DNA from: Octopus bimaculoides
Lineage: Eukaryota
DNA: 64,000 nt
Reading direction: 5' to 3'
NCBI RefSeq assembly: GCF_001194135.2
Contig: NC_068982.1
Location: 76,963,573-77,027,572, forward strand
Position numbers and translations under genes: made by a program. Positions 7,001 through 48,149 of this stretch are shown piece by piece (within the stretch, counting starts at the first letter, position 1; each line of letters begins with the position of its first letter). Below the pieces are notes generated by a model that had not been told where the DNA came from, searched no databases, and was given only the letters and a program-made list of their open reading frames with translations.

Positions 7001-10000
7001 CACCAACATCAACTTTGCCTTTCATCTTTTGAAGTGGATAAAATAAGTACCAGTTGAGCACTGGAATCAAGGTAATTGACTAGCCCCCTTCCCTGAAATT
7101 GTTGGCCTTGTGCCAAAATTTGAACCATTATTATTATTATTAACATTATGCGCTCTCTCTCTCTCTCTCTCTCATCAGATGATNNNNNNNNNNNNNNNNN
7201 NNNNNNNNNNNNNNNNNNNNNNNNNNNNNNNNNNNNNNNNNNNNNNNNNNNNNNNNNNNNNNNNNNNNNNNNNNNNNNNNNNNNNNNNNNNNNNNNNNNN
7301 NNNNNNNNNNNNNNNNNNNNNNNNNNNNNNNNNNNNNNNNNNNNNNNNNNNNNNNNNNNNNNNNNNNNNNNNNNNNNNNNNNNNNNNNNNNNNNNNNNNN
7401 NNNNNNNNNNNNNNNNNNNNNNNNNNNNNNNNNNNNNNNNNNNNNNNNNNNNNNNNNNNNNNNNNNNNNNNNNNNNNNNNNNNNNNNNNNNNNNNNNNNN
7501 NNNNNNNNNNNNNNNNNNNNNNNNNNNNNNNNNNNNNNNNNNNNNNNNNNNNNNNNNNNNNNNNNNNNNNNNNNNNNNNNNNNNNNNNNNNNNNNNNNNN
7601 NNNNNNNNNNNNNNNNNNNNNNNNNNNNNNNNNNNNNNNNNNNNNNNNNNNNNNNNNNNNNNNNNNNNNNNNNNNNNNNNNNNNNNNNNNNNNNNNNNNN
7701 NNNNNNNNNNNNNNNNNNNNNNNNNNNNNNNNNNNNNNNNNNNNNNNNNNNNNNNNNNNNNNNNNNNNNNNNNNNNNNNNNNNNNNNNNNNNNNNNNNNN
7801 NNNNNNNNNNNNNNNNNNNNNNNNNNNNNNNNNNNNNNNNNNNNNNNNNNNNNNNNNNNNNNNNNNNNNNNNNNNNNNNNNNNNNNNNNNNNNNNNNNNN
7901 NNNNNNNNNNNNNNNNNNNNNNNNNNNNNNNNNNNNNNNNNNNNNNNNNNNNNTATATATGCAGATATATGTGTATACATATAAGTACATGTATTTGTGT
8001 ATATAAACACACACACACACACACACACACACAGATATAATATTCATCTGTTGCTTGCAGTAGTTTTATTTACATTTACTTTTTTTCTTCCTTTTTTATT
8101 TACATTTACTTTTTTTCTTCCTAGTAGCTCATAATAACTTCATTTTTTTCCAGGTCTTGGTTTAGATCAGTTCCGTAAATTTGATCCAAAGGTAAGTTGC
8201 GTTTATGTTCTTTTATCAATTCGATTTTATTTATCTGGGTTGTCTTGAAATTTGTATCATGTCATCTTTTTGTTCCATTTTACTATGTTTTTGGGTTTTT
8301 TCTATTTTGTTTGTTTCTTAAGTAAGCATATCTTTCTTGAAAATACACACATATATACATGTAGTTATGTATTTGTATATATGTATATACATTAAATTGA
8401 TGTTATTATTTTAAAGTAAGTTTAAGAATAACAAGGGAGTATTTACTGGTGGCAGGGATTCCCTCTTGAGAGTAGCATCAAATTCTTTATGGAATTTGTG
8501 CTTGACTGAGACTTCGAGTTTCATGAAACAATTTATTCAATCCCTGACTAAACCATCAGGCAATACTTAAAGTCCTGTGTATAGACACAAACAAACATAC
8601 ACACACTCACACACACAAACAAATGCTAGCTTGTTTCCTAGTGCGAATAAGACTACCAAAAGCTTCATTATGAACAGGGATCAAAAAAATAACTGCACTG
8701 CATTGTCCATCATGCAGGTTAATAAAAGATGAGACCAGACCTTAAGTAGAGAGGTTCATTTGAAAAATATATTGCAGGACTCTATCCCAAGAATAGTGGG
8801 TGGAGAGAATGGATGATTGGATGTGTGTATGTATGTAAACACTAAGATACATATATGCTGCTGGAAAAAAAGCAGTGTATGTTATATATCTGTGTAATAT
8901 TTTTTATGTTGTAGATAAGTAATGCATTATTTTGAAGGGGTTTGTTTTTCTACATTAATAATATAATAATAATAATGAGCATATTGTATACTGTACTCGG
9001 TTACACAACTCATTGGAAAGGGGTAAAAGAGGAGAAGGAAACCAGTCAAGACAGCAATGTAAACCAAAACTACATGCATTGTACACATGTACTTGCTCAA
9101 AGCATAAAAGTGTAGCATACACTTGATCTATGTTATGTGTATTGCATAGGTTTTTATATTTTCATGTCATATATTTAATATTTCATCATTATTTAACATC
9201 CATGTTCCATACTGGCATGGGTTAAACTGTTTGACAAGATCCAACAGGTTCAAGGACCACTTCATGCTCCAATGTTTACTTTGGCATGGTTTCTATGACT
9301 GGATGCCCTTCTTGATGACAGCCACTTTATATATTGTACTGGGTGCTGGTTTGCATGTCACTAGCACTAGCAAGGTTGCCATGCAGCCGACAAAACTATA
9401 AACACCATTAGAGTTGGCTTTAGGCTAAGAGATGAAGTATTGGGGTGGTTAAAGAGTAAGAGAAGGGAGCAGATCAGGTTTCTTGCTGCTAAGGAGTCAC
9501 TTGGCTAAATGCATTTCAGAAGAGAGGGTGATCATTGTGGAATGGAAAAGAGATAAAATAGATAAGGATGAGGTACAAGGTGAGTAGAAATGAATTGGAG
9601 CAGTAGATCCAGGGGTGTGTGATTGTATGGCAGAGTGAGTGTTGGAGTCTGGGTGAGAAGGTGAATATAATGATGAATAAGTGTTAAGTGGATAAGTAGA
9701 GGTTGGGTAGAGCAGGTGTCTCTCTGGAATAAACTGAGGAAGCTGTTAATATATATTACATGGATAATAGTTTAGTTGTAACATTGATAATATCATCAAT
9801 CAAAATTTACACTATATCAACAATTTTATTGAGATAATTTTTTTTATTGACAGAAATATTGGTTTATATTGTGTAATATCTTATAAGTGTGTATATGTAT
9901 GTATTGAAGTTGTTTTTGTTGACATGATATTCATTTACCCAGGTAAATTAATGGATTTGTATCTTTTTGTTTTAATTATGTAAGGTTTTGTCATTCTTGT

Positions 10001-13000
10001 TGTTGTAAATTTACATTGTGCTTTTTGATTCCAGCTCAGTTAAAATAATCTTTATTTCATTCAATGTTAAATGTTATATCATTTTTAGTTATTGTTTGGT
10101 TAATTTTTTTGTTATTGTTGTTGTTTTCTCAACTTAAATCATATGAAAATAACTTTTGGTCAATTCTCATGCATTAACATCAACCTATCAAACCCACAGC
10201 TTTGAATGTGGTACTTTGTCATTAAGTAAAAACTTGGTATTTCTCGGTTATGTTTGTCTCTATAATACACATGTGAGCTTTATACTTCACACAGCACTAT
10301 ATTTATATGAAATTACTTATTTTATATTCCTGTCGCACTTATGCTTATATACTCTTCTGAGTTAAATATGAATTAATTTACACTATATACACACACCCAT
10401 TTGATATTCATTTGTAATATACTACCTGTGAAGTTTATTTGGTGAAAGAAGTTGTATAATTTACACATGTATTTCATTAAAAATTCATTAAAATTTTACT
10501 TTTATATTTTAAATTCTAGTGAGGATCTCTCTATTACAATCAGTATTGACCCATTATCAATAGTGAAAGCAAATTGTGTTTAACAGTAATTAACTGTTAA
10601 TTAACTGAAATATGGAAATAGTTTTAATGTATATTTATGAAATGGGTACCTTAGGATTAAATTTTAATTCTTTTTAAACAGTTTTTCTGTTCATTTTAAT
10701 AATCTACAAAATAATTTATTTACAAATTAAAAGTAAATCAATATATTATATAGTTATGTTGTTGTTTCTCTTATCAACTTTTTGTTGTTTAAGGTGTTTT
10801 GTAGAGATTAAAATCCTTGTGAGTGTAGCACTTTCGGGATCCTCTTGAAGAGAATATACTGTGGTTTTCCGTTGCCTAATCTTGTTCCACTGGAAGACTC
10901 AGATGAATTCCTTTCTTTCTCTCTCTCTCTCATATATCATGCCTACAGGTATTGTCAATCATGGACATTCATGCCCTTATGTCAGCAAAATTAGCACATT
11001 ATTGGGCTGGTCTTTCTAAAGCCAGATGCTAAGGCTGTCAAGTATCTCTCTGATTTTCCTGGCTTCTTCTTCCTTGTCAGTGTCTCAGTTGTTACTCAGT
11101 GCTTGATGCTTTTTCTTCTTTCTCATTTCATTTTCCATGAACTTATGTTGTTGAGAAACTTCTTACTTGTCTTTGCTCATCCAAGGCTCCTGATATTTGT
11201 CACTCTATGTAGAATAATTTCAGCATTCTTCTAAAGAACCACACCTCTAGTATTAATAAGCTTGAATTGTTATTAAGTTAAAAACAGAAGTCACTTGTTC
11301 ATTGTACACTATTTCAGCTGTTGGCAGTTTGGGTTATACTTATTCATAGTACCTATTTGCAGCCAAATAGACTGAACCAGCTAGAACAATGTACTTTACC
11401 ATTAATACACCACAATACTAATAAAGAAAAAAGCAATATATATAAACTAATTTTGGATTGATAATCAATACTTAATCAGTTAATGCAGGTCTACTTGTAT
11501 AAATTTTAAATGTCAGTAAAAGATTATAAAGATGTAGCAGTTACTTAGTCACTTACTAATTTCAGAATGTTTTGTTTTTATTTCACTCCTTATTAATACT
11601 GCAGAAAAAAAAGTAATTATTTTGCTTAATTTTATAATCATTAATTTTAAAAAATATTTAGCACTGTGTCATCTTGTGAGCAACTTGTATCTATATTTTC
11701 CATGTAAACTGAAAATATATATTTTATAATCCTAAAACAGCCCTTAGAATTGTTTTAAGAAAATTTTTGAAAATCAAAAACATTTTATATGAAATATAAT
11801 ATCAAATCTTGTTTTTGATTAGATTAAAAAGTTTTGTAAAATTATAATTTGTTTGATTTCTGAATCTACTTAAATTTGTCAATCCTTTACATACCTACAT
11901 TATCCTTAACCAATACAGACTGTGGTATTGGACTGCATTTAAACTTATTTAATAATCTGCAGACTTCTTTAGATATTTAACAGTAAAGCATACATTTTAC
12001 CTGCAGTTCATACTCTAACTATATATATAATCTGAACAATGTGAAGTCAGTCCCAGTTGGATTTACTGTAATAATGGGCTGGAGTTTAATGACCTGTCAT
12101 TAATTGAGATATTAATTACTGTGGATTTATTCTTTGATGCTTAGACATCAATTCTCTATGTGGATAGTACTTTAAATATATACACAGTGTTATTCCTATG
12201 GTATGTGGTTTTATGGGAACATATATCTTACTAAGTTATTTCTCAATATACTTTTTTTTTCTAAATGTTGGTATTTGAACATTTAAATTTCTTTGCCCAG
12301 TTAGTTGATTTACTTGTTTCTGCATCATCACACACTACACACACTGTTGTAAACACTTTTATGAAACTACCTTTTGCTTTGTGGAACTCATTCATCATGA
12401 AACAAGGAAAGGACAACACTTTGAAGTAATTGACAATTTTAGTTCAGTATATTTTTCTCAGTTTATGCTGTCTTGTTTTATTGTCATTTGTTTACAAATG
12501 GTAAGTTTAGTTAGTTTGCTGGTTGCACAATTGTAGCAACTCTGCTTTGTTAGAAAATTCAGACTATTTCATGACATGCACCAGATATTCACATTCAAAT
12601 CTGACAGAACATATTGAGAATGAACAGATAGGTTATTATCAATATAGTTCACTTGTTCTGTATATTAGTCTAGTACTGTTTGTTTAACAATTCTGTCACT
12701 ATGACTGTATATTTATATATGTATGGCTATTATAGAATGTATGTGTTCTAGATTCAAATAAATATGTAGTGTTGTAGTTTTTTTCTTTCAACCACTTTAT
12801 ATTCTCTAATTGCAGTTGGAATGAAGCTTTTTTTTATATATATAAGTTTCAGTTATCCTTAATTCTCATGCGTTCTTTGTTTCTTTTTTTATACATAATA
12901 TGAACATTTTCCTTCTCTTTACATATAATATGAAACTGTTTTGCGTTTTGTTTTTTTCTTTTCTTAACCTTTTCCTTCCAAAAATAAATAGCAAAATTTT

Positions 13001-14180
13001 GTTATTTATTTCATCTCTTTTTGCCTTTAGAAGGATTCATTGGTGAGTTTAGTGTCCCTTTTAATATCTCTTTACCTTTTCCCCCTCCACCCCTCTTCTT
13101 TCTTTCTCTCTCTGTTTCTCTCTTTCTATCTCTGTCTCTTTCTCTATTGATCCTACTGACAGTTAACAATTTTTGGTCTTGATACATACATTTGTGTTCT
13201 AGAATCAGTGGAATGCCTTTCTCATGATTAATTCTTGTCTTCTACGCAAGGAAGACAGAATTCATTAAGACTATTTTCATTTCTACATTTTTGCCCATTC
13301 ACTCTGTTCAAATGAGTTTGCATATTATTATTATATTTATTTTTTTTTTTCCTAACTGTTGTTTACAATCTGGTTTTTGCACTTAGTCAAAACTGTTGCC
13401 ATGTAAGAAAAACAACAGAACCAATGTTAATAGTTCTTTCTTAATCATCACTTGTATCAGAAATCAGTGTTACTTTTTTTTATTTTTGCATTCTCCGTAG
13501 TATTTTCATTGCCTGCGGCACTATTATAGATATTTCGCCACACAAGTTTTTTTTTTGTTTGACCTGCCCACCCCTATTTTTAAAGGAATCTTATTAAAGC
13601 AATGATTTTGTACAACATTCATTTCAGTAAATGACTATGATGATAATGATTTCTGTTGATGAAGTATTTTGGGGGTGGCTGGGGTATATTTTCATAGAGA
13701 GGTAATAATGTCAAGTTTATTTTTCATAAACTTCAGCTGGATGAAATTATATTCAGTCTAGACGGATTTGAACTCATGAACTGAGAGATATTGATTGATT
13801 TGACTGCAGTCAACATCTAAATTTATCAATCTATAGTCTCGAACTTTCTCCAATACCCTTTCATCATTATGTTGTTGTCATCCAAATAGTTGCTCATTAA
13901 ACTACACAACTAATAGTCCGTTGGTCTCATTTAAAGTTTATATATATATATATTCTTAAATAATAATAATAATTATAAGCTTTAAGCTTATAAGTATTCA
14001 CCATGTATTGGCTAAAGAAAGTAATTTAATATTGGGGCATATAAGCCCTCAACAGAAAGAAATATATGCCTGAGTATTAGACTATTTTCTTTAACCAGTA
14101 GACTGTAAACACTTATAAGCTTAAAGCTTATAATTATTATTAATAGAATTTTCACTTGTTACCATTTCTTCATCTAATGC

Positions 14181-14229
<49 letters not shown>

Positions 14230-17200
14230 ATTAAATGGAGATTTCTGATCTCTTATAGCTGCTTAGTAGTAGTGAGGTGGTAATGGATGTAATATTTTGT
14301 TTAACAAGAATGGTATCAAATGTAGGTGGCTCATCGAAACCTAAATTCATGGTCACAGTTTCAGTTCCCTGCTGGAGTTATTTTCACTTCATTCTACTCT
14401 CACTAAGAACCTTTGGAAAGTCATCAACCTCACAATTTGTCATTTAGCAATATAAAAATTCTAGGTTTTTATACCTGCAAATTAAAGAGTAATCACTAGC
14501 ATGAAGAGATTGAACTGTGCCAGGTTAACCCTTAACAAATATCTCGATGACCCAGTGGATTACAGATCATTAATTAATTTAGTTTTTGTTTCCATGTTTA
14601 TCGACTGAGTGGTCTCTTTTCTTAAGAAGCTTTATACAATAAAAAATAACTATTAAATGTAGCAGCATTTCATGACAAAGTTATTTTGGATTGAGTGATT
14701 TTTAAATTCAAATTTAACTTGATTGAAAAACGTTGTCATTTGTGCATACACCCATGCATGCATGCACATTCATGTGTGTGTATATGTACATACATTCAAT
14801 GAACATGAATTTGGCTTGTGTTAACTAAAATGTTGAGTTTAGTAATTAAGTTTCTTTTATAAAATCTAATTCTATCTATCCCAGGGTGGGTGTGTTTTTC
14901 TTCAGACAAATGCCAATTTTCTTAGAAAAGAGATTTTCAATTACCTTTAGAATTTGAACTCAAAACTAAGCACTAAAACTTCATACATTAGAACAACAAC
15001 ATACCTCTCGGCTCTAATATATGCTACACCACTTTTCAATCTACAGATTTGGTGAAGGTTTTTCCCAAATATTTTACAGCTGGCTGATAACTTCCAATAC
15101 CCAAGTTTGTGGGCAAGCTTTCTGAATGTCACATTGGTGTTTGAGCCTTATTGAGCAGAATTCACTGAAATGATGTACTGATTGTGGAATGAGTGAAGTT
15201 CACTTTCCCAAGGAGAGACATTAATGGCATAACATAGACAGGGAACTAAAGTAATAAACAGGCTCAGTTCATACACCATAGTAATAGAGATATGTTGCCC
15301 TATCACCAGAACCCCTTTCTGTCTTTTATAAGGGTCAAAGGAATAGGCATTTTCATCATCATTTAACATCCATGTTCCATGCTGGCATGGGTTGGATGGT
15401 TTGACAGGATTTGATGGGTTCAAGGACTTCATCTTGCTTCACTGTCTGCTTTGACATGGTCTCTAGGATTGGATGCCCTTCCTAATGCCAAATGCTTTAC
15501 TGCATGTGCTCTGTGCTTTCCTTTTTTTTTTTTTATCATGACATGAACACTAGTGCGGTCATCATGCAGCTTGCAAGACTATGAATTCCGAAAGAGCTAG
15601 CTTTATGCTAAGAGATGAGTTAAGATATAAGAGAAGGGTCCAGAGTAGAACATCTTTCTTGCTGTAAAGGATTCACATGCCTACTCAAATTTTAGAAGAG
15701 ATGGCCGGTGTGATTGGGTGAAGCTGGAAAGAGATAAAATAGTGGTGATGTGATGTCTGGGTGAATGCTGAAGCTATGAGGCGAGTAGAAGTAAATTGGA
15801 GTTTGCTAGAAAGAATGAGAGATGGGAAATGGCTGAGATGCTAGGAAGAACAAGTGTTGATTGATAAATATTGGAGGTAGGGAAGAGTAATTGACAACTG
15901 TAAAGATTGAGGAAGATGGAGGGGTAGATAAGGGATGGGAGGCTGACCAATCATGAAGGACAGCAGAATAAACAAGTGGCTTTAATGTAACATAATACTG
16001 GCACTTGGTTTTGTTTTACAACCTTTGCAGGATTTTAAACCTGCTGTTTAAAAGCATCAGATTCACTTAAATAGTGTAGCATGTTTGTTAAGTGTCTGGA
16101 ATAAGTAAGACTGAACAATCATCATCATCATAAGTCAAGAAAATCTGGTATTTAGTCTTTTGCTTAATCTATGCTTATCAGCTTGAAAATTAAAAGGGTT
16201 TTTTTTTTTTTTTTACTTCAAAAATTTTGTAAGCAAGTGAATAGTTTGAAATATTTCCAGTAATCTTTGAATAATCTTTCATGTGTTATTGGTTGGTATT
16301 TTTGTTGTTTTTTTAATTCCATCTGTGGCCAAATATCTACAAGATATGTTCAGATTATATAAATATTAGTTCGTAAGTTATTAGTAGTATTTTTATTAAT
16401 ATTCTTTGTCTGTGGTGGGACATAGGACCACAAGTGTTTTCTTAGTTGCTGATATCAAAATATTTGATTTTAAAAAAGAACAACAATGTGCAGCTGGACC
16501 TTGATACAAAAGAAATATCTATCTTATTGCAGTTCCCTCCAAAAGTCTGCTGAATGAAACAAACTTTTAATATTTTCTATTTTAGAGTAAACTTTCAGAT
16601 TCAATTATTTTTCTTTGCATATAATGAATATAGTATTTAAATTTTTTTTCATTTTATTTCTCTTTCTTCTAAAATTTGCAGTGTATANNNNNNNNNNNNN
16701 NNNNNNNNNNNNNNNNNNNNNNNNNNNNNNNNNNNNNNNNNNNNNNNNNNNNNNNNNNNNNNNNNNNNNNNNNNNNNNNNNNNNNNNNNNNNNNNNNNNN
16801 NNNNNNNNNNNNNNTTTTAAAAAATATTTTGCATTCATTCATAAAATGCTTTTCGTTTTTTAAAAAAAATTTTTACTAACATGGCTTTACTAGGTCTACA
16901 AATTTTGACATTTGCATGTCTTTTTGAAGTGGATTTTTACATCGGAATACTCTCTTCATAATACTAATTTTTCTTTTCCTCCTCATAAACTGGAGTTACT
17001 TTTTATTTTTGAGTTAATGAAGTTTTATCTCTATCTTGCTTTTGCTTTTTTTTTTAACATGTAAATGAAGACTTCAAAATTAAATTAAAATATGTTTTTA
17101 AAATGTTGGTGTGACATAGCTGAGCTTTTATATTTTAAAATTCTGCATTTTTGCTTCTGCCTCATCAATACGCAATATATAGCTGTTATTCAGTGATATG

Positions 17201-20200
17201 CAGTAAGACATCACTATATGTTATAAGAAAAGGGTTTGCAGTTGAAACAGAGCTGAAAGATTTGATGAATCTATTAACCTCATCTTGTTTTTCTTTAAGA
17301 GAATTGTGAGTTGCAATAAAGGTTTGTAAAGTTCAAAAGTAACCCAATCTCAATCTGTACCAATATGTCAGGCAAAATCAATCAGTTTATACCAATCTTT
17401 AAATGAAAATATAATTTTCCAAACAATCCATACTATTACAGTAATAATTGACTGCTTTTGTCTCGGTACTAGGCTGTTTAAATATATATTTCCCCATGGT
17501 CGAGTCATATTAATATAATAGTAGTAATGCAAGCAAAGCTTAAGTTTTTTTCATCAAATATCATCATCCTTTTTCATCCATTCTTTTTCTATGCTTACTT
17601 AGTGTTGGATGAATCTTCTCCTCTACAGTGTCTTGCCACTTCATCCTGTCATTTATCATCTCCTTCATACAGGTTCAGTATCCTGAGAGAAGCTTTTACC
17701 ACTTCTTCTTCTCCTTTCCATGTATTCTAAGGAAGTTTTCCAAATACCAGGAGCTGGTAGAGCAGTGCAAAAACCAGAGCTAGCAGGCACATTGCAAAGT
17801 AATTGAAGTGGGCTGCCAGAGTGTCATCAGGCATTCATTCTGTAAAGCTATGACTAGGCTTGGAGTTACTAGTGCAACAATGAAGGCAGCCATAAATTCC
17901 ATTACTAAAGCTGCAAAGAAAGCCACTAAGTGACTTTTGATAAAGATGATAGACTGGTGGTTCATTGCTACTGTGATGCAAGCTGGGACTTGATCAACTC
18001 TGGTTGGGTCAACAAGGCAAGGGAGTCTGATGATGAAAGACCTGAAACCCCAGAAACATCATTGATGATGCATCCCAAAGCATGCAGAAGTTGTATCTTG
18101 GAACATCACTGAAGATTACCTTTTCTCTTTTTTTTTTCCGTTATATCAATGAAATTCTATGCAAAGCTTAAAGCAAACCGTTTGGTGACATTGCAAATTA
18201 AAAGTGACAGGGTACATCTCCAACCTCTGGAAACTTATCTATTCAGGATTGTCTAGAATTGTTTTAGAAGGAATAGGATCAGTTACAAATTAATTGGCAG
18301 TAAACCTTAGTAGATAATCTGAAATGGAATGTCTGGGTATCTGTTAACATTTTATATATTGGAAGTGAAACATAGGATTTTCGAGCGAGATCGTTGCCAG
18401 TGCCCCTGGACTGGCTTGTGCGGGTGGCACATAAAAGACACCATTTCGAGCGTGGCCGTTTTCGTGCGGGTGACACGTAAAAGCACCCACTACACTCTCT
18501 GAGTGGTTGGCGTTAGGAAGGGCATCCAGCTGTAGAAACTCTGCCAAATCAGACTGGAGCCTGGTGTTGCCATCCGGTTTCACCAGTCCTCAGTCAAATC
18601 GTCCAACCCATGCTAGCATGGAAAGCGGACGTTAAACGATGATGATGATATACACTATTATATTATATCTTATCCAAAACATATAAAATAAATTATGTTG
18701 ATCCTAAATGCTAATCATAAAAAACTGGATAGACAGGACTACTAATGAGGGAACATCATCATTGTCATTTTTTATGTGAACTAGGCTTCTCATGGGAGCA
18801 CAAGACCAAAGCAGAAATGTATGGATACACTCTGCTCATCTCTATTATCTGTTCAATGCAGAGTAGGCTTTGCTGAACAACAGTCCATATCAGATGTTAT
18901 ATGATGAACACTTTGGTACCCTAATAGAAGACAAAAACCCACTTAGTTACATTGATGTTATTGGCAGAAATACACATGAAATTGAAGAACTACCATGGGT
19001 TTTTAATAAGGTAAAGACATTTTTGGTCTGTACCCATTATGAGACCACTTGAAGAAGAGGAGAAATGTTATGTTTATATTGGGGTTGGGGACAGTTTATG
19101 TTTTTGATATTGGTGATGCTAAGTAAGAAAATAGGTTGATACAGGTTGAATAAGTTTATTTATTTTATTTTGAATGTAGATACTCTACAAATATCACATA
19201 CATACCCAAGGCAATATCACAGTCCAGTGACTGATGTAAGGAAGTAAAAGAATATATGTAACAATAATTGGGTCTGAGCCAGGAAAACAAGTGGTCTGTA
19301 CATTGTGATGACAATAATTGTGAAAAGCCTTGATATTCATACAAGGTTTTAGAGCAGACAATGTTAAAAACTATGATCTTTGTAGCTGTTGATTCTGGTC
19401 ATCATCATCATCATCATTTAACATCCATTTTCCATGTTGGCATGGGTTGGATGGCTTGACAGGAACTGCAAGACTAGGGGCTACACCAGGTTCCATAGTC
19501 TGTTTTGGTTTCCATAATTGGATGCCCTTTGTAATGCCAACCACTTTACAGAGTGTACTGGGTGCTATTTATGTGGTACTTTGGTTTTAGGATGTCACTG
19601 CTGTTATGGTGGGTGGGTCTTCTTGAGTACAGCAATGCACCACATATCTCAGTCCTCTGTCATCGCCTTGTAAGGCTCAGTGTTTTGAGATCAGTCTTCA
19701 ATACTTCATCCTGTCTTCTTGGGTCTCTCTTTTCCACATCTTCACTCAACTTTAAGTGATCAGCACTTATTTAACTGCATTTCATTTAGTCTAATTCTGT
19801 TCTTAATTAATTGGGTTATAACTCTCTCCACAACTTTCATTATCTGGACCAGCAATGTGATGCCTCTGTAATTAGCTCTGTCTAAGGCACCTGCCTTTGT
19901 AACAACTAACAATGATGCTGCTACACCAGTCACTAAGGATTTCACCTTCCTGAACAACCTGATTAAGTATATGGGTGACTAGACTGTATCCAACTCTTCC
20001 AGATACCTTAAGCATCTCAGTAGTGACACCTGATGGACCAGGGGTTCCTGTCTTCATATCTTTGATTGCCTTATCTATCAAAATGCTGTCAACTAGAATA
20101 GCTGGTCTCTCTTTTGGGGTCACATGAAGGAGACTCCCTTTTTCCATTCATTCTTCACATTTAGTAGCCTTTCATTGTAGCTCTTCTACACATCTTTCTT

Positions 20201-25433: not shown

Positions 25434-28400
25434 TATAGAATTCTGCATGGTTTTTATTCTCCATGTTTCTCTCTTTGTCTTTCTAAACTCAATGTACATC
25501 CAAAGTTGAAAGAAACACCAAGAGCTATTCACTGGTATTTGCTCTTTTTACTGCTGCTAAATGTTGTTGTTGTTGTTTTTATTTTTTTTAAATCTTTATT
25601 GTCAACNNNNNNNNNNTGTATTTTTCTGCTTTTATTTACTTCCTTAATCAGAATCCTCGGACACCGAAGGTAAGTTTAAATTCCCCCTCAAGCTGCTTAC
25701 AAAAACAAGGCTTTAGTACTTAAAATACAAATTTAAAAAATCCAGAAATCAAGCATCCCATGGACAGTTTGCCTTATTTAGTTTTTTTTTAGTTTTTTTT
25801 TTTATTATGGGAGCTAAAATGTTTATTTCAAACCCTTTGCCTTAAAAATAAACCCAAACACCCCCTCCTCCAAGAAAAACCAACCCAGTCAAATTTACAC
25901 CTTGAAAATCACTGATGGAGTTGTTATTCCCTTACATTACACTATATCAAACACTGCTTTTGTCCCAACACAAAACCAATATATTGGCTTCTTTCACAAA
26001 TATCTGAATTATGCATTTTACCTCAGCTTATTTTATGCATAATGCAGCAATCAGTGGAATAATATGCCTACATTGGGAAGTTTCTCTTTAAATTTGAAGT
26101 TCAGAATGTTAGAAAAACTAAAACTAGTAGTTTGTAATTTTCAATAAGGAAATTATATGTGAGATTGGTCTCTTGTTGCATAGAGATAAATTACGATTGC
26201 AAGAAAAGTTTGAAATCAGGTACACTCATAAGTACAGTTCTATATTTTGTATGTTGCATGAATAATCATTAGACAAAGATCATACCTTATTTACATTATT
26301 TACATTTGACGGATATTTGTCCTCATCTTGTTTGTTGTTATCACAAAGTTTCGGCTGATATACCCTCCAGCCTTCTTCAGGTGTCTTGGGGAAATTTTGA
26401 ACCTGGGTTCTCATTCCTAAGGTATTTTTCGATGTTGTTATTATTATTATTATTGTTCAGGTCACTGCTTGGAATCGAACTAGGAATCTTGGGGTTAGTA
26501 GCTCACACTCTTAACCACTATGTCATATGCTCATGGGCAATTATGGAATGAATTCTAGCACTTATAAACCTAATATTTTTCTATCCTTCCTTAATACTGG
26601 TTCCCATATGCTGCTCATATCTGTACTCGGTCTGCTTAGGAGGTTGTTGTGTCCTAGCATATGGGCTGCTTCTTTTAGTTTTCCTATTTTTCAGTGATGT
26701 TCTCTATTATTTTAACTTCATCCCACAGGGTGAGCTGGTCTCCATTTTTCCATACATGATTAGCTATACCCGATTTATCAATATCTCCTCATGTCACAGC
26801 TTTGCGATGTTCATCTACCCTTATTTTGAGGGGGTGGCATACTTCGCCTTTGTTTAACCTACCACAGCTGCATAGGATGGAGTACACGCAGTCTTTGGTC
26901 ATATTCTCTTCTATTGGTGGTTTTACTCGAAGGAGATATTTGCAAAGTGTTATATTACTCTTGAATACTGTCCTGATGTCATATGGGCCGCATATCTTTT
27001 GCATCTTTTCAGAGAGGCCTTTCACATAGGGTAAACAGACTGTGGACAGTTTATTGGCCTCATCCTCTCTCTTCTTCATAATTGGAGTGGATAGTATACT
27101 TTTGGAGTAGTTGTTGCTTAACAGATCGTTACTGAGCTTGATCATTTTCTCGTGGTGTGTCTCACAATCACTACTTATATTCTTTGCACGATGTTTTAGG
27201 CACTGAGCAATCCCTCTTTTTACACTGTATGGATGGTGGGAATTGAAGTTGAGGTATCGTCCAGTAAAGGTCGGCTTGTGGTATACGGGCGTCCTGAATC
27301 CATACTTGGTGCGTGTTATTAATACATCTAGGAATGCCAGCTGATTGTCTTTTTTGAGGAATGAAGTTAAAATAATAGACAGAGAACACCACTGGAAAAT
27401 ACGAAAACTAAAAGAAGCAGCACATATGCTAGGACACAACAACCTCCTAAGCAGACCAAGTGCAGATATGAGCAGCATATGGGAACCGGTATTAAGGAAG
27501 GATAGAAAAATATTAGATTTATAACCCCTAAAATTCACTCCATAATTGCCCATGAGCATATGGCGTAGTAGTTAAGAGCGCAGTCTACTAAAGCCAAGAT
27601 TCCGAGTTTGATTCCAAGCAGTGACCTGAACAATAATGATAATAACAACAACATTGAAAAATACCTTAGGAATGAGAACCCAAGTTCAAAATTTCCCCAA
27701 GACACCTGAAAAAAGCTGGAGGGTATATCAGCCAAAACGTTGTGTTAACAACAAACAAGATGAGGACAAATATCCGTCGAATGTAAATAATGTACACTCA
27801 TAAGTAGTTTTGGAAGAAAGGTTAGCAACATACGATGAAGAGAAACAAGAACAAGGAGGAAGGGGCAGGGAGGGAACAATAAATTTTTTTTTTTCTGATA
27901 TGTGAGTCAAATGGAAGGTGCTGACATCTTATTTGAGGACTTGAGCAAATTCAAAACTACATAAAGGTGCTATAAAATAAAGTTTATATTAATGAGTTTC
28001 TAAGTGTGTTATTTATGAGATTAAATAATTTTACAGTTTGAGGTGCTTTACATATTAAGATAATTTTTCTTTTCTTCTTTTGAGAGGTAAGTTTGACATA
28101 CATGACAACAGATTAGGGTTTAATTTTTGTTTTGTTTTTCCTTCCAATGAAAAACTCTGCACCACTGAATATGGTTGTCATGTGTACAAATATTGTCTTG
28201 GATGTGACCTTTCAATAGGACAAGATATTTATATTGAAATCTTTTGCTCTAAAACTTGACACCTTGAAGAATTGGCCGCCTCTGTAGATATCTAAATTAT
28301 GTGTATTTACATGGGAGCAGGTATGTCTGTTTAGTTAAAAGGTTTGCTTTGCAACTACATGGTTTGAAAATTATTCCCACTGCACAGCATCTTAAGCAAG

Positions 28401-34028: not shown

Positions 34029-35786
34029 CCGGAGATGTACTTATCTGGCAAGTGATATGATCTGAGTGTGTTGAAACTAAAACAGTTACAGCATGGAAGA
34101 CACGTATGTACCATTCAAACACTAAAAAACTACTGACTTCTTTTAATCCTTTATTATTTTGTGTAAAAAATTTTCATCGCACTATCTGCAACCTGGTCGC
34201 CAACACAGTTCTACTTGAACTGGTTTAAAACAAGGTTATTAGCCAACATATATAATCGTTCTGACCAAATAAACTGACCCACAACAGGTTGTTGGTGATG
34301 ACAACCAGAATTACTAACCTTTATGGATGAAAAAAAATTATTTAAAACCCTGTGGCCTATATATACTGGACAACAGCCTTGTCTTAAACCAGTTGAAGTG
34401 AACTGTGTCAGTGACTCAGAGATACTGTGAGTAAAATATTTGATGCCAAAAAATAAAGGTGTAATTGAAGTTAACAGATTTTATATGTTTTTTTTTTTCA
34501 AATGGCTAACGTGTGTTCCAAACTGTAATTGAGATATATAAAGGTTTGTGTCTTGTTCTATGATGAAAAATAGTTACTGTCTAGTGTTTACAGTTTTGTG
34601 CATTCTTCTGTAAAGAAATAATCATATCAGGATTGCTGTAAATAGTCAATAATCGTTGATGAATTTCTGAATATTTTTCTTTAAGTTACCCTTGGCATGT
34701 GTAAATTTGCGTTTCGTAGTGAAATAAAATGAATCCAAAAACTGTATTGACTTTCATTTATTTCTGTTGTAGGCTTATGATGTTAGTGCAATTAGTAACA
34801 TTTGGCTGTTAAGCTAATTAATCTAAATGAAATATGTGCATCCATCAATGTAGTTCTTATCATCACCAAATCTCTTCGTTTTTTTCCTTCCATTTTTCTT
34901 TATTCCAGACATTTTTACAGAAAGTAAGATATGATATGAAGAGCAAAAATTTCTTTCTTATCTTCCGTTGAGCATTTCATATAAACTATCTTCCCCTTTT
35001 GTTTACCATATTTCTATTGAAATATACTACTTTTGTTTCAATTAATTTTGAAAACCGTGAAGAATTTAATAAAATATCTTGGTCATGATAACCCTTTTGT
35101 TACCATAGTGAAGAATTTGACTTTGTCTGGGGTTTGGAACATAAATTGAAATTTGATAGGTTTAATTTAGATCACTTCAAAACAGGAAGTTTTTATCATA
35201 GAACCAGAAGCTGTTTTGGGCAGGTTGGTTTCAAAAGGTTGGTTAAGCTAGTATTTGAAACATTAATTAACCTGAAAGTTTGGTGGAGTGTTTTAATTTG
35301 GATAATTTTAAATAGGAAGGATTGTCATAGAACCAGGGGTGGTTTCAGGCAGGTTGGTATCAAAAGGGTTAACAGCAACAACAACAAAAAAAGGAAAAAG
35401 TACAGCTGTAGCCTAAATGTAAACAGTTTTCTTTTAATGTTTGTTAGGCGAGTGGGAATAACAATATTGAAAATACTAGTATTTTCCATAATGTGAAATT
35501 TTCTTTTGTGTTTAGGATGTATCTGCAGAACTTGTGGAAGGGCTCGAGGTATTATTTCATTTGATTGCATGTTGTTACCCACAGAAAACAAAGTGATTTT
35601 TACAATAAAAAAATTCTTTAATTTTTTTTTTCTTGTCAGCAGCTTATAACTTTTAAACCATTGGAGTGACACTTAATTACATTGTTCATTAAGACCCGTA
35701 AAATACATTTTTTTTGTATAATTAATTCTACTTTTCTCTTTCCAATTCAACTATTAGCACTGTGAGTTTTAACAAACAATAAAACA

Positions 35787-38800: not shown

Positions 38801-41800
38801 TATAATTCAATAATGTTACTGGATCGATAATTTAAATCTGAATGAGAGGAAGTCAAATAAATAAATTAATTAATGAGGAAAAAAATGTTTTTATAAAATG
38901 TTTTATTTATTAAGTGATAATAGTTTATGTTTTTGCAAATGTTGTATTACTAGAGCTGAATTAAATTCAATTATTTTGTTTTTATTATTATTATAGCATG
39001 AGGATTATCCGGAACTAGAACTTGGTGAACACAGTATATTTTATAAACTTGGACAAAGTGGACTAATCTCCTTCTCTGATTACATCCTGTTGCTGACTGT
39101 ACTATCAAGTAACTCGATCCATTTTCTTCACTTCATATTTTATATCATAATCTTTTTTTTTTCATTCATAGTCTGGTTGTTTGTTTGAGCTTTTATTATT
39201 TTTTTATTTCTGTCATAAAATCATTGTCCCTAAAGACTATCTTTCAATGGATCAAACAGGTAGAAGTTGGAGGACACCAGATCCAGGCCACTGTCCATTG
39301 CCTAGTCTGTGGCCAAAGTTGTGTGCTCTCACACAAATGGGGATCGTTTTCAGATACTTGTTCTGTCTCTTCCTCTGAATGACCTCTCTTAGTTTATTGA
39401 TGTATCACTTACTGCTCACAATACAGCTATATTCCACAAAAATGAAAGAGAACAATGCCCTTGTCATTCCAGCAAACAGTCTCCATGATTTTCTAAGCTG
39501 ATTACTATCTCCTGAACTTCAGCTTTGGAGAAAAGGTGGAATGCCATTCCCTAGACTGAGCCTTTATTTCTTGATCATGAAGATATAGCCATTTTTCATT
39601 CTTACCAGGTCAGAAAACAAAAACCTATCCTTATTGGCTTTAGACAATCCTAGCAGTTCAGAACAGACTCCCACCTTTTTCTTCTTCGAATTGAATGCCA
39701 TCTGCCAAGTTACCCAGTTTGCATATACCTTTTGATACCCAGAGTCTTCTATTGTGGCCAGTGAACAGATTGTGACTCATCTGCCACACCAATCAGTTTG
39801 AACACTTGCTGACAATCACAGTTGAGGGTTTCCCAATGCATAGATTGTCTTCAAACTGTGCACATTGCCTTCTACATCTGCCAAACAACCTGTACCCCTC
39901 CTTCATCAAGAACTTGACAGCGTATAGCTTATGTTCACATTATTAGCATGCAAGGAAGACGAACAGGAAGAAAAGTTACTCTACCAGTATGTGCAAGTTG
40001 AACAACCTATTGCTATTAATGGAAAAGTTATGCCCACTTCCAAGACAAACCTCATGTGTCTATACACAAGATAAGTTTTGATAATCTATTATTTATTTAT
40101 TTATATTTGCCTTGATCTGTAATAAAATCACCTTTGATCTCATCCTTTAACATATGCTCAATAGCTACAACCAGAAATTCTACTTAACTCCTGTACATAT
40201 ATAATTGCTATGTTTTATATTTGTTACCCACTGTACACACTCTTTGGTCTATTTTGACTCAGTAACTTTATTTATCCTGATTAATACACTTTCTCTCATA
40301 ATAATTTCCACTCAATACGTGTCTTTGATAAAACAGAGTTAAAACATTTCATCTATAACAAATAACAACTGTAATGTTAACATTACAACAAACACTCGTC
40401 TAACATACTGGTTGTGTTAGACTATTGAAGTGTGTTATCATGAAAACACTGCCAAATCAAAATTTCCAAAAGATTCCCAATATTATGAATTACTTTAATA
40501 AGCCCTGCGGTGTTAAAATGTTGCTCACGAATTTTCATTAATGATTCTTTTATCCTCTTGTTAGCTAGAGTGGTATACAGCTACATAGACTGTTGTAGTG
40601 GCATAGAAGAAACTAGGAAAAGTTGTAGCTTGTTGATCAGTGTATGTTCTATATTTTGAGTGAGAAAAATAATTCCAAAATATCATATAGAGGGACATGA
40701 ATTTGCAACCCTTTAGTTAGTAATTTAATATTTTATACACACATCTGCTACACACACACACACATCCTGAATCAAAAATTTCTTATATCTTTTCAGCACC
40801 TCAACGAAATTTTGAAATTGCTTTCCAAATGTTTGATTTAAACGGTGATGGTAACGTTGATGCTGAAGAATTTGAAAAGGTTTTCCTTTTTTAATTTTAA
40901 ATCTTTATCTGTTTATTTATTTTTGTTAACATTCCTTTTATAACATTTCACTTTAGGTGACATTGTCACATCTATATTTTGCCTCATCTTGGTGCTATAT
41001 TGCTTGACTTCTTCCACTATATCCCTATCTATTTCTATCATTGACCATCTCTCTCACAAACCTCACACTTTCCATCATCACCCTATTTTTCATCCATCTA
41101 CAGTTAGAAAACAGTCCCTGTAACAGATTTCTGTGCAGCTTCTGTCTACCAAATTTCATCCTTTAATCTTTAAGTACATGGCCAAAGTGCTGTACAGTGG
41201 GATTGAACCCAAAGCAACGTACATGTGAATAAACATCTTAACTACTCAGACATACCACAGGTTTTATATGGTTTTGTTGTCATTTAAATTGGTTCCTGCA
41301 GTGTCTGTTTTTTAATGTTGGAACATCTATGTATATTTAGGAGGAATTTCATGTTTGGATGCTCTTCCTGTTGCAACCGTTACCTGTTTTCATGCAAAGA
41401 TTTTTTTTTATTGTTTAAGGACTTGAAAGTGCAGAGCAACCAGTCATAATGTAAACATCATCATCAGTTCACTAAAGTGATAATAAGCATGTCTCTTTAT
41501 CATACTTTAACCTTTCACTGCCTGACATAAAGCCACTTGCCTCTCTTCTGCAACCTCACTCAGTTGAGGGCTCTTTTTCTTTCTCTTGCAAATTACTCAG
41601 CAACCTCAAGAGTGCCAATGTCACAAAAATAGCACCCAGTACAATCTGTACAGTGGTTGGCATTAGGAAGGGCACCTAACATTAGAAACCATTCCAAAGC
41701 AGTCCTGCAACTGATTGGATTCTGTCAAACCATCCAACTCATGCCAGCATGGAATGGAAGATGATATGCAAAGGATTATCTGCAGTTGTTCCCATCTACC

Positions 41801-46055: not shown

Positions 46056-48149
46056 TCTTTTTACACTTTACAACATTTAATGCTAATTTTGTTTTTCAGC
46101 TAAAACTTTTACATTAAGTTTATCTTATTTCACCTTACAGTCCTAAAAACATCACTAACAACTGCATATGTTCCTGCATTTACTTTGTAAATAACTTTAA
46201 GTTGAAATATGTTGATTTGTTTAAATAAAAACTTTTTACAAACAAGGAAAGACTGAATTCATTTCTAATCTAATGTTTATATAAGTAAAGGATCACATTT
46301 CAATTACTGGGTGCAGTCATCTGGATACACTTTCTTTGGGACGAGATCTGCAACTTATGATTTCATACTTTGTTTAAACCATTAATTGAAATTTTAACTT
46401 CTGGATCTTCATTCATCACAGGACATACAATTGCTATCCGTAGAGATACCAAGCATTATATCTCAACAAAATACCTAGCATAGGATGAAGCTTTTGCCCT
46501 GGTAATTTTCCAAGTTATAAAAACCCTATAATTGCTTTTGTGTACGGTGAAAAGACTTCATCTGTAGTATATGTACAAATGTTTTATTTCATCAAAAGCA
46601 ATTTCAGCCTAACTGTTGGTACAACCTTGTTCGCACCTGATATATCTATAAACAAAATAAGATTGTTCCATCATATTGCAATTAGTTTTCCCTGTTAAAT
46701 CTTTTCTCCAAAGTGTCTCTAAGTCCTTCTGTAACTGTTAGAAATCTTTCAGTGCCAAAGTTCTTTATATTTTGAAGACCTTCCCTATCAGAAGATCAAA
46801 GTCATCTATTTGTTACATGCTTCAGATGTTCTGTATTATAGACATTCAAAATTTGTCACCTGGTTAAGGCAATATGAATTCACAAAACTACCAACTTTAT
46901 ATGCATGTAGTAAACTTGTACAGCTAGAAAAATTCCATTTTCTTAGCAATAAAAAGATGTATCATCCAAGCTGCTGCATAAAAATCTGCAATTTCAAAGA
47001 AATTACCATCCACCTAAGCTCAATATATGATCCAACTCTTTCCTATTCATATTGGATGACTTACAATAGACTTCTGCTGTTGAGTATAAGTACCTTGAGA
47101 CCAAATACATAGCTAACTCCTTAGTCAACCATTCTTGTCCCAACATTTAGCTAGATACAAAACCCATATTACATGCAATGCTCATGTCTGCCAAGAGTTT
47201 AGTCAACATTCAAATATACATTTCAAACTCCAGTTAATAACACAAAACTCATTCAATAGTAAAAGCCTTTATACATAAAAGATGTTACATTGAAATTTCT
47301 AAAGTGATATTATCTAGCAATTAGGAAAAACAATTGTTCATAGAATGGTGGTGATGAAATACTTGAGGTGTGAATTGTTTTAAAGCAGAGCCAGTGGCAT
47401 ACAGTATCATCAAAAAAGTTTGCTTTTTATTTTTTTTTTTAAGTTGCACAATATTTAGCAACACTACCACCTAATGCCAAAAGCTACCCCCAACTGGATG
47501 GATGATTCTTAATGCATTAAAAAGAAAACTGCATTTAAGATCCATGGTAAAATCCTTAGTTTCCTCCTCGTCTATGAATTTAATGATTATGAAATTTGCT
47601 ATAGAATCTGAAACATAACTTTACCATGAATTCACTTATTTGAAAGTCTTATTCAAAAAATGCTTTCTTCAAATGATGATGCATTGATGTAAAATTGATT
47701 TTAGGCTTAGAATCTACTCCGCAATGTTGTCATGTTCATAAATTCTCCATTGTCAAGCTTCATGTAGAGCAAGANNNNNNNNNNNNNNNNNNNNNNNNNN
47801 NNNNNNNNNNNNNNNNNNNNNNNNNNNNNNNNNNNNNNNNNNNNNNNNNNNNNNNNNNNNNNNNNNNNNNNNNNNNNNNNNNNNNNNNNNNNNNNNNNNN
47901 NNNNNNNNNNNNNNNNNNNNNNNNNNNNNNNNNNNNNNNNNNNNNNNNNNNNNNNNNNNNNNNNNNNNNNNNNNNNNNNNNNNNNNNNNNNNNNNNNNNN
48001 NNNNNNNNNNNNNNNNNNNNNNNNNNNNNNNNNNNNNNNNNNNNNNNNNNNNNNNNNNNNNNNNNATATCAAGCAGAAAATTTTAAATAATGTTATAAAG
48101 GATTTTTTTCTATATATATATATATATAAAAAAAGAAATTAATACTTAC

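What the first reader, a model, noticed from the sequence alone, without database searches (positions are those of the whole stretch)
13031..13042. 12-nt (or 9-nt NAGNAG) MICU1 microexon candidate (KDSL)
Seen: a very long pyrimidine-rich run (about 12900-13030) ending TTGCCTTTAG, then AAGGATTCATTG and a strong GTGAGT donor, with pyrimidine-rich sequence downstream. The tandem acceptor TAG/AAG gives +4 or +3 aa, both in frame. It has the same length as the vertebrate MICU1.1 microexon but an unrelated sequence. Inference: with microexon B this allows several isoforms (none, A, A', B, A+B), and K-K-D-S forms a weak basophilic kinase motif.
Basis: partly seen in the sequence, partly recalled or inferred. 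Interest (0 to 1): 0.8.

Follow-up and report, generated by a model that had tools for sequence, protein, structure and literature searches.

The report
Real, ancient MICU1 microexon in octopus
The 12-base stretch is a genuine, optionally included mini-exon of the octopus mitochondrial calcium-gatekeeper gene MICU1; it is already in public gene models, is conserved across molluscs, and sits at the same spot as the vertebrate muscle/brain mini-exon.

Summary
Observation confirmed. The window is the Octopus bimaculoides MICU1 gene on the + strand. At 13031-13042 the sequence is ...ttgcctttag|AAGGATTCATTG|GTGAGT, in frame (KDSL). It lies in the 30.8-kb phase-0 intron between the exons ending ...FDPK and starting HEDYPEL.

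It is a real alternative cassette microexon:
- Exact O. bimaculoides isoforms with KDSL are already public (XP_014771004.1, XP_014771002.1).
- O. sinensis RefSeq lists 12 isoforms: every combination of A (KDSL or DSL), B (NPRTSK) and a third cassette C (33 nt).
- The same 12 nt occur in a Sepia esculenta RNA-seq contig.
- The exon and about 640 nt of flanks form the best-conserved block of the whole gene between Octopus and Argonauta.
- A strict scan of the intron finds only A and B; shuffles give about 0.03.

Homologous 21-nt exons (K-D-S-L-x-x-L) occur in annotated gastropod, bivalve and chiton models. Aplysia also uses the tandem acceptor (with or without K).

The insertion site equals that of vertebrate MICU1.1 (EFWQ), and a beetle has a 12-nt exon there too. 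The exon inserts into a linker predicted to be disordered.

The kinase-motif idea is not supported by conservation. Regulators and functional effect remain inferred. The exon is correctly called but already annotated, so interest is moderate.

The parts
8154..8191 (+). Upstream constitutive MICU1 exon (…[13 protein letters not shown]). It ends CCAAAG|gtaagt at phase 0 and is equivalent to human exon 5 (…RFDGKK).
   Evidence: Gene model. Matches O. bimaculoides/O. sinensis proteins. Aligns to human MICU1 chains.
12898..13542 (+). Conserved intronic block around microexon A. It is the highest-scoring Octopus-Argonauta block in the whole gene, scoring above any coding exon.
   Evidence: blastn of the window against Argonauta hians L003: 480 bits, 73.5% over 752 columns. 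Alignments A1 and A2.
13010..13030 (+). 3' splice-site region: polypyrimidine tract (89% Y over 13010-13027), UGC at 13022-13024 (-9 from the exon), proximal acceptor TAG at 13028-13030.
   Evidence: Invariant in O. sinensis, O. vulgaris and Argonauta.
13031..13042 (+). Microexon A, 12-nt form AAGGATTCATTG (KDSL). The 9-nt form 13034-13042 (DSL) uses the distal acceptor AAG at 13031-13033.
   Evidence: Public isoforms with KDSL and with DSL. Identical 12 nt in Sepia esculenta transcript contig L004. 12/12 identical in Argonauta.
13043..13048 (+). 5' splice site GTGAGT. It is followed by TTA|GTGTCC, so reading through gives KDSL-VSL, which fits the 7-residue molluscan pattern.
   Evidence: The gastropod homologues end ...TTG|GTGAGT and ...CTG|GTGAGT after 21 nt.
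13049..13150 (+). Downstream CU-rich tract (86% pyrimidine, with UCUU and CUCUCU motifs), conserved in Argonauta. Candidate binding platform for a PTB-type protein.
25652..25669 (+). Microexon B, AATCCTCGGACACCGAAG (NPRTPK), with donor gtaagt. A 10-N assembly gap lies at 25607-25616, just upstream.
   Evidence: Matches XP_014771003.1.
35516..35548 (+). Cassette C, 33 nt ([11 protein letters not shown]), with donor gtatta. TGCATG at 35566-35571 is conserved in Argonauta.
   Evidence: Matches XP_052834335.1.
38997..39108 (+). Downstream constitutive exon ([20 protein letters not shown]…), equivalent to human exon 6 (ISQEREKFADEGSIFY…).

Best explanation
13031-13042 is a genuine alternatively spliced cassette microexon of Octopus bimaculoides MICU1. 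It is spliced between the exon ending ...FDPK (8191) and either microexon B, cassette C or the exon starting HEDYPEL (38997). It adds KDSL, or DSL when the distal AG of the TAG|AAG tandem acceptor is used.

The residues go into the flexible linker between the MICU1 N-domain and the first EF-hand lobe. This is the same intron and phase as vertebrate MICU1.1 exon 5' (EFWQ). The exon is the cephalopod version of a mollusc-wide microexon that is 21 nt long (K-D/E-S/N-L/I-x-x-L/M/W) in gastropods, bivalves and a chiton.

Shown:
- exon anatomy;
- inclusion and skipping in public models and in cuttlefish RNA-seq contigs;
- strong nucleotide-level and flank conservation;
- a loop location, by model and by the literature.

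Inferred:
- Inclusion is set cell-type-specifically by factors bound to the conserved flanks: a UGC next to the 3' splice site (SRRM/eMIC-type activation) and CU-rich tracts on both sides (PTB-type repression).
- By analogy with MICU1.1, a change in linker length and charge shifts the Ca2+ threshold or cooperativity of uniporter gating.
For: - Gene and frame.
- Species: exon 1 ORF and the C-terminus match O. bimaculoides proteins.
- Public isoforms: O. bimaculoides XP_014771004.1 (KDSL) and XP_014771002.1 (KDSL+NPRTPK) are exact matches to constructed sequences. O. sinensis X1-X12 and O. vulgaris cover all A/A'/B/C combinations.
- Transcript evidence: intron-less Logan contigs, one from SRR20545815 (Sepia esculenta), read ...CCTAAG AAC AAGGATTCATTG GAATTG... 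Sibling contigs lack the exon.
- Conservation: 12/12 nt plus splice sites are identical in Argonauta. The flanking block scores 480 bits, the best in the gene.
- Chance: only A and B pass a strict scan; shuffles average 0.025.
- Gastropod genomes: Biomphalaria ataatag|AAGGATAGCTTAGACGATTTG|gtgagt and Aplysia aaaaag|AAGGATAGCCTTGCTGACCTG|gtgagt. Aplysia X1 and X2 differ by the K.
- 7-residue homologues in Patella, Haliotis, Littorina, Mactra, Mytilus and Liolophura.
- Site equivalence with human ...RFDGKK|ISQERE, and EFWQ inserted after residue 181 (PMC8909990).
- Loop: AF2 gives pLDDT <50 for KDSLHEDY and coil for residues 66-85. PMC8909990 states that the loop is unresolved in crystal structures.
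- Regulation hints: UGC at -9 and CU-rich flanks. eMIC-exon features are described in PMC8797185. Zebrafish micu1 microexons are srrm3-eMIC dependent (PMC13281805).
Against: - No read-level RNA-seq from O. bimaculoides was examined. The KDSL isoforms of this species come from an older RefSeq release (seen via EukProt) and are absent from the current-release isoforms listed (X1-X3).
- The 9-nt form is not on record for O. bimaculoides.
- The case for eMIC-type regulation is thin: a single UGC, an ordinary 37-nt AG-exclusion zone, and no UGC upstream of the Biomphalaria or Aplysia homologues.
- No tissue information is available.
- The functional effect is by analogy only. The inserted residues are unrelated to EFWQ.
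Confidence: 0.9

Rival explanations
1. Chance pseudo-exon: a fortuitous AG...GT pair in a long AT-rich intron that is never spliced in.
For: The exon is only 12 nt and the intron is 30.8 kb. It is missing from the current O. bimaculoides isoforms listed.
Against: Exact KDSL isoforms are on record for this species. There are 8 of 12 O. sinensis isoforms with A. The cuttlefish transcript contig carries the identical 12 nt. The surrounding block is the best-conserved in the gene versus Argonauta. The scan expectation is 0.025.
Confidence: 0.02
2. RBFOX-driven muscle-type exon, a direct functional equivalent of vertebrate MICU1.1, whose inclusion is driven by RBFOX2 through (U)GCAUG.
For: Same intron and same 12-nt length. 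Vertebrate exon 5' is RBFOX2-dependent (PMC8909990). The beetle 12-nt exon has two GCATG motifs downstream.
Against: No GCATG lies within -400/+600 nt of exon A. The conserved TGCATG sits downstream of cassette C instead, so C is the better RBFOX candidate.
Confidence: 0.12
3. Phospho-switch: the exon creates a K-K-D-S basophilic kinase site, and the tandem acceptor toggles the -3 lysine.
For: K-K-D-S is present in the cephalopod 12-nt form. Ser is kept through a TCA versus AGC codon switch between cephalopods and heterobranch gastropods, which suggests selection on the residue.
Against: The preceding residue is T or Q in gastropods, bivalves use Q, and Ser is N in Haliotis and Mactra and D in Mytilus. 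Lys is a weaker determinant than Arg for basophilic kinases, and MICU1 is in the intermembrane space (established knowledge).
Confidence: 0.08
4. Neutral linker-length variation: the loop tolerates insertions, the isoforms are functionally equivalent, and the combinatorial splicing is noise.
For: The site is disordered and hosts unrelated inserts in different phyla. Human exon 5'' alone does not change MICU1 properties (PMC8909990).
Against: The 12 nt are identical, synonymous sites included, between Octopus, Argonauta and Sepia. Hundreds of nt of flanks are conserved. The K-D-S-L pattern and the tandem acceptor are retained between cephalopods and gastropods. None of this is expected under neutrality.
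Confidence: 0.1

Closest known systems
Vertebrate MICU1.1 exon 5' (EFWQ; Vecellio Reane et al., PMC8909990) with exon 5''
   Same: Same gene and the same phase-0 intron (after ...FDGKK / ...FDPK). Same 12-nt length. Several tiny cassette exons in one intron give combinatorial isoforms. The insertion goes into the loop that is unresolved in crystal structures.
   Different: The peptide is unrelated (KDSL versus EFWQ). There is no GCAUG near exon A. A tandem acceptor adds a +/-K variant. Octopus has three cassettes (12/9, 18 and 33 nt). Tissue specificity and effect on Ca2+ affinity are untested.
SRRM3/4 (eMIC)-dependent neural microexons (PMC8797185), including the zebrafish micu1 microexons (PMC13281805)
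   Same: Length <=27 nt, a multiple of 3, in a surface loop. UGC close to the 3' splice site, CU-rich tracts, and strongly conserved flanking introns.
   Different: There is only one UGC, and the AG-exclusion zone is unexceptional. Neural inclusion and dependence on octopus Srrm234 are not tested. The UGC is absent upstream of the gastropod homologues.
NAGNAG tandem acceptors
   Same: TAG|AAG, with both AGs in an HAGHAG context. The isoform pairs differ by exactly one codon (K).
   Different: Here the tandem site belongs to a microexon, and it is retained between cephalopods and gastropods (TAGAAG in Octopus and Biomphalaria, AAGAAG in Aplysia). That is unusually deep conservation for a NAGNAG.
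c-src N1 type PTB-repressed neuronal microexon (recalled from established literature, not tested here)
   Same: A very short exon flanked on both sides by CU-rich tracts.
   Different: No PTB binding data exist, and there is no downstream UGCAUG enhancer near exon A.

Membership tests
Alternative cassette microexon | Length <=27 nt (<=51 in broad definitions), frame-preserving, with canonical AG/GT sites | tested here: met
   12 nt (or 9 nt), phase 0, tag|...|GTGAGT.
Alternative cassette microexon | Both inclusion and skipping products exist | tested here: met
   O. bimaculoides XP_014771004.1 (with the exon) versus XP_014771005.1 (without). O. sinensis X1-X12. Sepia-type transcript contigs with and without the exon. 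Read-level support was not examined.
Alternative cassette microexon | Flanking intron conservation above background | tested here: met
   Block 12898-13542 is the top-scoring Octopus-Argonauta segment of the gene.
NAGNAG tandem acceptor | NAGNAG motif at the acceptor | tested here: met
   TAGAAG at 13028-13033. It is conserved in Argonauta and Biomphalaria, and Aplysia has AAGAAG.
NAGNAG tandem acceptor | Both AGs used in vivo in this species | tested here: inconclusive
   DSL forms are on record for O. sinensis (X2, X5, X8, X11) and Aplysia X2. The constructed O. bimaculoides DSL isoforms are not in the collection.
MICU1.1-type exon 5' (vertebrate) | Inserted in the exon 5/6 intron, after the residue equivalent to human 181 | tested here: met
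   phmmer alignment to human MICU1 chains and PMC8909990.
MICU1.1-type exon 5' (vertebrate) | Encodes EFWQ or a recognisably homologous peptide | tested here: not met
   It encodes KDSL, with no similarity.
MICU1.1-type exon 5' (vertebrate) | RBFOX2-dependent, with GCAUG in the flanks | tested here: not met
   No GCATG within -400/+600 nt. Dependence itself is not testable here.
MICU1.1-type exon 5' (vertebrate) | Raises Ca2+ affinity and lowers the MCU activation threshold; muscle/brain restricted | not testable with these tools
   Needs expression data and Ca2+ uptake assays.
eMIC (SRRM3/4, Srrm234)-dependent microexon | UGC close to the 3' splice site, a long CU-rich polypyrimidine tract and a long AG-exclusion zone | tested here: inconclusive
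   UGC at -9 and 89% Y in the last 18 nt, but the AG-exclusion zone is 37 nt, similar to constitutive exons of the gene. Criteria taken from PMC8797185.
eMIC (SRRM3/4, Srrm234)-dependent microexon | Neural-specific inclusion that is lost without the eMIC domain | not testable with these tools
   No tissue RNA-seq or perturbation data were available.
Basophilic kinase phosphosite | Conserved basic residue at -3 and a conserved phospho-acceptor | tested here: not met
   The -3 residue is T or Q in gastropods and bivalves. Ser is replaced by N or D in Haliotis, Mactra and Mytilus.

The most novel reading that the evidence does not exclude
The octopus KDSL exon is the shortened cephalopod form of a microexon that was already alternatively spliced, with its +/-Lys tandem acceptor, in the last common ancestor of molluscs. 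The ancestral form would be 21 nt (K-D-S-L-x-x-L). The octopus read-through KDSL-VSL|GTGTCC suggests that an internal GTGAGT donor truncated it.

The MICU1 exon 5/6 intron would then be a bilaterian hotspot, possibly ancestral, where tiny exons tune uniporter gating: vertebrate EFWQ, beetle HGxQ, mollusc KDSL. MICU1.1-type regulation would not be a vertebrate invention.
Probability: 0.55. Interest if true: 0.55.

Novelty: already known. Interest (0 to 1): 0.38.

Why it matters
MICU1 sets the Ca2+ threshold of the mitochondrial uniporter. In vertebrates a 4-residue microexon at this exact site retunes that threshold in muscle and brain.

The same linker carries conserved, combinatorially spliced microexons in cephalopods, in other molluscs and in a beetle. 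This suggests that splicing-based tuning of mitochondrial Ca2+ uptake is old and recurrent in animals with fast excitable tissues.

Equivalent-position microexons between protostomes and vertebrates are rare: four between fly and mouse eMIC programs (PMC8797185). That makes this a useful comparative case.

For this window, the practical value is an annotation fix. Exon A, and the 9-nt variant, should be restored to the O. bimaculoides MICU1 models.

Tried and rejected
- Rfam scan of the whole window gave no hits, so the conserved block is not a known intronic RNA gene.
- RBFOX, QKI and MBNL motif scans around A found no GCATG and no ACTAAY.
- AG-exclusion zone and UGC comparison with the gene's other exons was not distinctive.
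- Look-ups for genomic loci of P0123, P0049, P0007 and P0148 returned nothing on record. Only the longest product per gene is indexed. Loci were obtained through the longest isoforms instead.
- Pfam on two long non-MICU1 ORFs gave no hits.
- Literature searches for invertebrate or cephalopod MICU1 microexons found only vertebrate work.
- I did not test RNA secondary structure across the flanks. With three near-identical Octopus sequences plus Argonauta there is no covariation power.
- I did not run fold search, because sequence mapping to PDB MICU1 chains was unambiguous.

Full report
**What is in the window.** A tblastn with a human MICU1 sequence written from memory placed MICU1 exons on the + strand from about 6.5 kb to 46 kb. 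I refined them to splice sites:
- 6492-6657
- 8154-8191
- 38997-39108
- 40797-40879
- 42071-42265
- 43293-43442
- 44091-44199
- 45567-45656
- 45904-46055 (stop)

Exon 1 is the ORF at 3627. The translated exons are identical to Octopus bimaculoides MICU1 proteins (N-terminus [12 protein letters not shown]..., C-terminus ...[13 protein letters not shown], cassette NPRTPK). The window is therefore O. bimaculoides MICU1.

**The observation.**
- 13028-13033 is TAGAAG, 13031-13042 is AAGGATTCATTG and 13043-13048 is GTGAGT.
- The upstream exon ends ...GAT CCA AAG| at phase 0, and the downstream exon starts CAT GAG GAT. The 12 nt therefore read K-D-S-L in frame, and the distal AG gives D-S-L.
- The pyrimidine claim is partly right. 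12900-13030 is 68% pyrimidine (top 2% of windows in this intron) but has an A-rich interruption. The last 18 nt are 89% pyrimidine.
- The 102 nt after the donor are 86% pyrimidine, the richest window of that size in the intron.

**Chance test.** I scanned the 30,805-nt intron (8192-38996) for four features together: YAG, >=80% pyrimidine upstream, an in-frame stop-free insert of <=30 nt, and a GTRAGT donor. It found none on the - strand. Block-shuffles averaged 0.025.

**Is it a real exon? Yes.** A protein search and cluster listing show that O. sinensis RefSeq carries twelve MICU1 isoforms. They are every combination of:
- A as KDSL, DSL or absent;
- B (NPRTSK) present or absent;
- a third cassette C (DMSTELVEGLE) present or absent.

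O. vulgaris shares several of these isoforms. The current O. bimaculoides isoforms listed contain only C, B or none. I therefore built the hypothetical O. bimaculoides isoforms and looked them up exactly.
- KDSL-only exists as XP_014771004.1 and KDSL+NPRTPK as XP_014771002.1. Both come from the older RefSeq release and are preserved in EukProt.
- The DSL forms are not on record for this species.

Independent transcript evidence comes from intron-less Logan RNA-seq contigs of a decapodiform.
- One is from run SRR20545815, which PMC9538352 lists among its juvenile Sepia esculenta transcriptome runs.
- The contigs read ...GATCCTAAG AAC AAGGATTCATTG GAATTG.... The exon is 12/12 identical to octopus, synonymous positions included.
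- Sibling contigs lack the exon.

**Genomic conservation.** I fetched the O. sinensis, O. vulgaris and Argonauta hians loci.
- The exon, both AGs, the UGC, the donor, about 60 nt upstream and about 250 nt downstream are almost invariant in Argonauta. Conserved islands continue to about +500 nt.
- In a whole-window blastn against the Argonauta locus, block 12898-13542 is the highest-scoring segment of the gene (480 bits). The best coding exon scores 239 bits.
- By contrast, exon B differs at 5 of 18 nt, and cassette C is diverged at the protein level (DFTDELYEELE).

**Depth of conservation.** Annotated models of other molluscs carry a 7-residue insert at the same junction:

| Taxon | Insert |
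|---|---|
| Biomphalaria | KDSLDDL |
| Aplysia | KDSLADL |
| Haliotis | KDNLFEM |
| Patella | KDSIPIW |
| Littorina | KESLKDL |
| Mactra | KDNIAAL |
| Mytilus | KDDFRTL |
| Liolophura (chiton) | KSSLKFM |

Isoforms without the insert exist in the same species for Aplysia, Patella, Littorina, Biomphalaria and Haliotis.

At genome level the homologue is a 21-nt exon:
- ataatag|AAGGATAGCTTAGACGATTTG|gtgagt in Biomphalaria pfeifferi;
- aaaaag|AAGGATAGCCTTGCTGACCTG|gtgagt in Aplysia.

Both keep a tandem acceptor. Aplysia X1 and X2 differ by exactly the lysine.

In octopus, reading through the donor gives KDSL-VSL followed by GTGTCC. This fits the 7-residue pattern. The cephalopod exon may therefore have been shortened by an internal GTGAGT donor. 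That is inference and untested.

**Comparison with the vertebrate exon.**
- phmmer against PDB chains aligns octopus ...FRKFDPK|KDSL|[16 protein letters not shown] with human ...KRFDGKK|ISQEREKFADEGSIFY.
- PMC8909990 places EFWQ after residue 181, between exons 5 and 6. It describes a second 2-residue exon 5'' that yields four human isoforms, RBFOX2 dependence, and a loop unresolved in crystal structures.
- Zebrafish micu1 has two microexons that depend on the srrm3 eMIC domain (PMC13281805).
- A beetle, Aethina tumida, has a 12-nt exon (CACGGTATGCAG, HGMQ) in the same phase-0 intron. It has a UGC upstream and two GCATG downstream. Other beetles show HG[LVF]Q.
- Position and length are therefore shared across phyla, but sequence is not. 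Common ancestry and recurrent evolution at a permissive loop cannot be told apart here.
- PMC8797185 reports only four fly eMIC exons at positions equivalent to mouse ones, so such coincidences are uncommon.

**Protein context.** An AlphaFold2 model of the window-encoded protein with KDSL (53-sequence alignment, mean pLDDT 72) gives pLDDT below 50 for residues 69-76 (KDSLHEDY). Residues 66-85 are coil, between a short strand and the first helix of the EF-hand lobe. The exon therefore changes the length and charge of a flexible linker rather than a folded element.

**Regulation (inferred).**
- The features present are a UGC at -9 (13022-13024), CU-rich tracts on both sides with UCUU and CUCUCU motifs, and long conserved flanks.
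- These fit eMIC-activated, PTB-repressed microexons as described in PMC8797185.
- The evidence is thin. There is one UGC, the AG-exclusion zone (37 nt) is ordinary, and the gastropod homologues lack the UGC.
- There is no GCATG within -400/+600 nt of A. A conserved TGCATG lies 18 nt downstream of cassette C (35566-35571). C, not A, is thus the better candidate for RBFOX control.

**The kinase-motif idea.** K-K-D-S exists only in cephalopods.
- The residue before the exon is T or Q in gastropods and bivalves.
- Ser is N or D in Haliotis, Mactra and Mytilus.
- The Ser codon switch TCA versus AGC between cephalopods and heterobranchs hints at selection on the residue in those lineages.
- A conserved basophilic site is nevertheless not supported.

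**Novelty and verdict.** The exon was correctly recognised from raw sequence and is real, but it already exists in public gene models for this species and genus. Searches of the paper library found only vertebrate work on MICU1 microexons. The mollusc-wide conservation, the retained tandem acceptor and the cross-phylum positional coincidence therefore appear undescribed there. They are the part worth following up. I rate the exon itself as already known and its interest as moderate.

Noticed in passing
It has a TGCATG (RBFOX-type motif) 18 nt downstream, conserved at the same place in Argonauta (L003 about 18380-18440). C is a better RBFOX candidate than microexon A.
   Followed up: partly
window 13043-13057: Reading through the GTGAGT donor gives KDSL-VSL followed by GTGTCC. 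This matches the 7-residue K-D-S-L-x-x-L pattern of the 21-nt exon in other molluscs. The cephalopod exon may have been shortened by a new internal donor.
   Followed up: partly
L004:34-1818 and L005:71-1846 (Logan RNA-seq transcript contigs; L004 is Sepia esculenta, L005's species was not identified): An extra AAC (Asn) codon sits between ...CCTAAG and whatever follows (KDSL, ELSS..., or HDEY), and it is present in some contigs and absent in others. A 3-nt difference that is independent of the downstream exon is not explained by a canonical alternative donor.
   Followed up: no
window 13380-13545: Highly conserved intronic islands lie 340-500 nt downstream of exon A (for example TTGCACTTAGTCAAAACTGTTGCCATGTAAGAAAAACAACAG, with a GTAAGA donor-like site, and TTTTTGCATTCTCCGTAGTATTTTCATTGCCTGCGGCACTATTATAGATATTTCGCCAC). 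No Rfam family matches. They may be splicing control elements or an unannotated exon.
   Followed up: partly
L007:2725-2736 (Aethina tumida): A beetle 12-nt microexon CACGGTATGCAG (HGMQ) lies in the same phase-0 MICU1 intron, with a UGC at about -15 and two GCATG within about 70 nt downstream. Other beetles have HG[LVF]Q.
   Followed up: partly
L008:19862-19873 (Aplysia) and L006:23627-23638 (Biomphalaria): Further lineage-specific 12-nt microexons lie in the same intron: GAGACCTTTGAG (ETFE) in Aplysia and GATGAGACGAAG (DETK) in Biomphalaria.
   Followed up: partly
window 25607-25616, 7184-7953, 16688-16814, 657-760, 47775-48065, 52610-52780: These are assembly gaps (runs of N). One 10-N gap lies only 36 nt upstream of microexon B, so part of its upstream regulatory sequence is missing in this assembly. 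O. sinensis has continuous sequence there.
   Followed up: partly
window 26789-27559 (-) and 48327-48872 (-): There is a 256-aa intronic ORF on the minus strand with a transposon-like look. There is also a 181-aa minus-strand ORF downstream of MICU1 with a Gly/Tyr-rich stretch and ...[20 protein letters not shown]..., reminiscent (from memory) of an hnRNP F/H-type RRM exon. Pfam gave no hit for either.
   Followed up: partly
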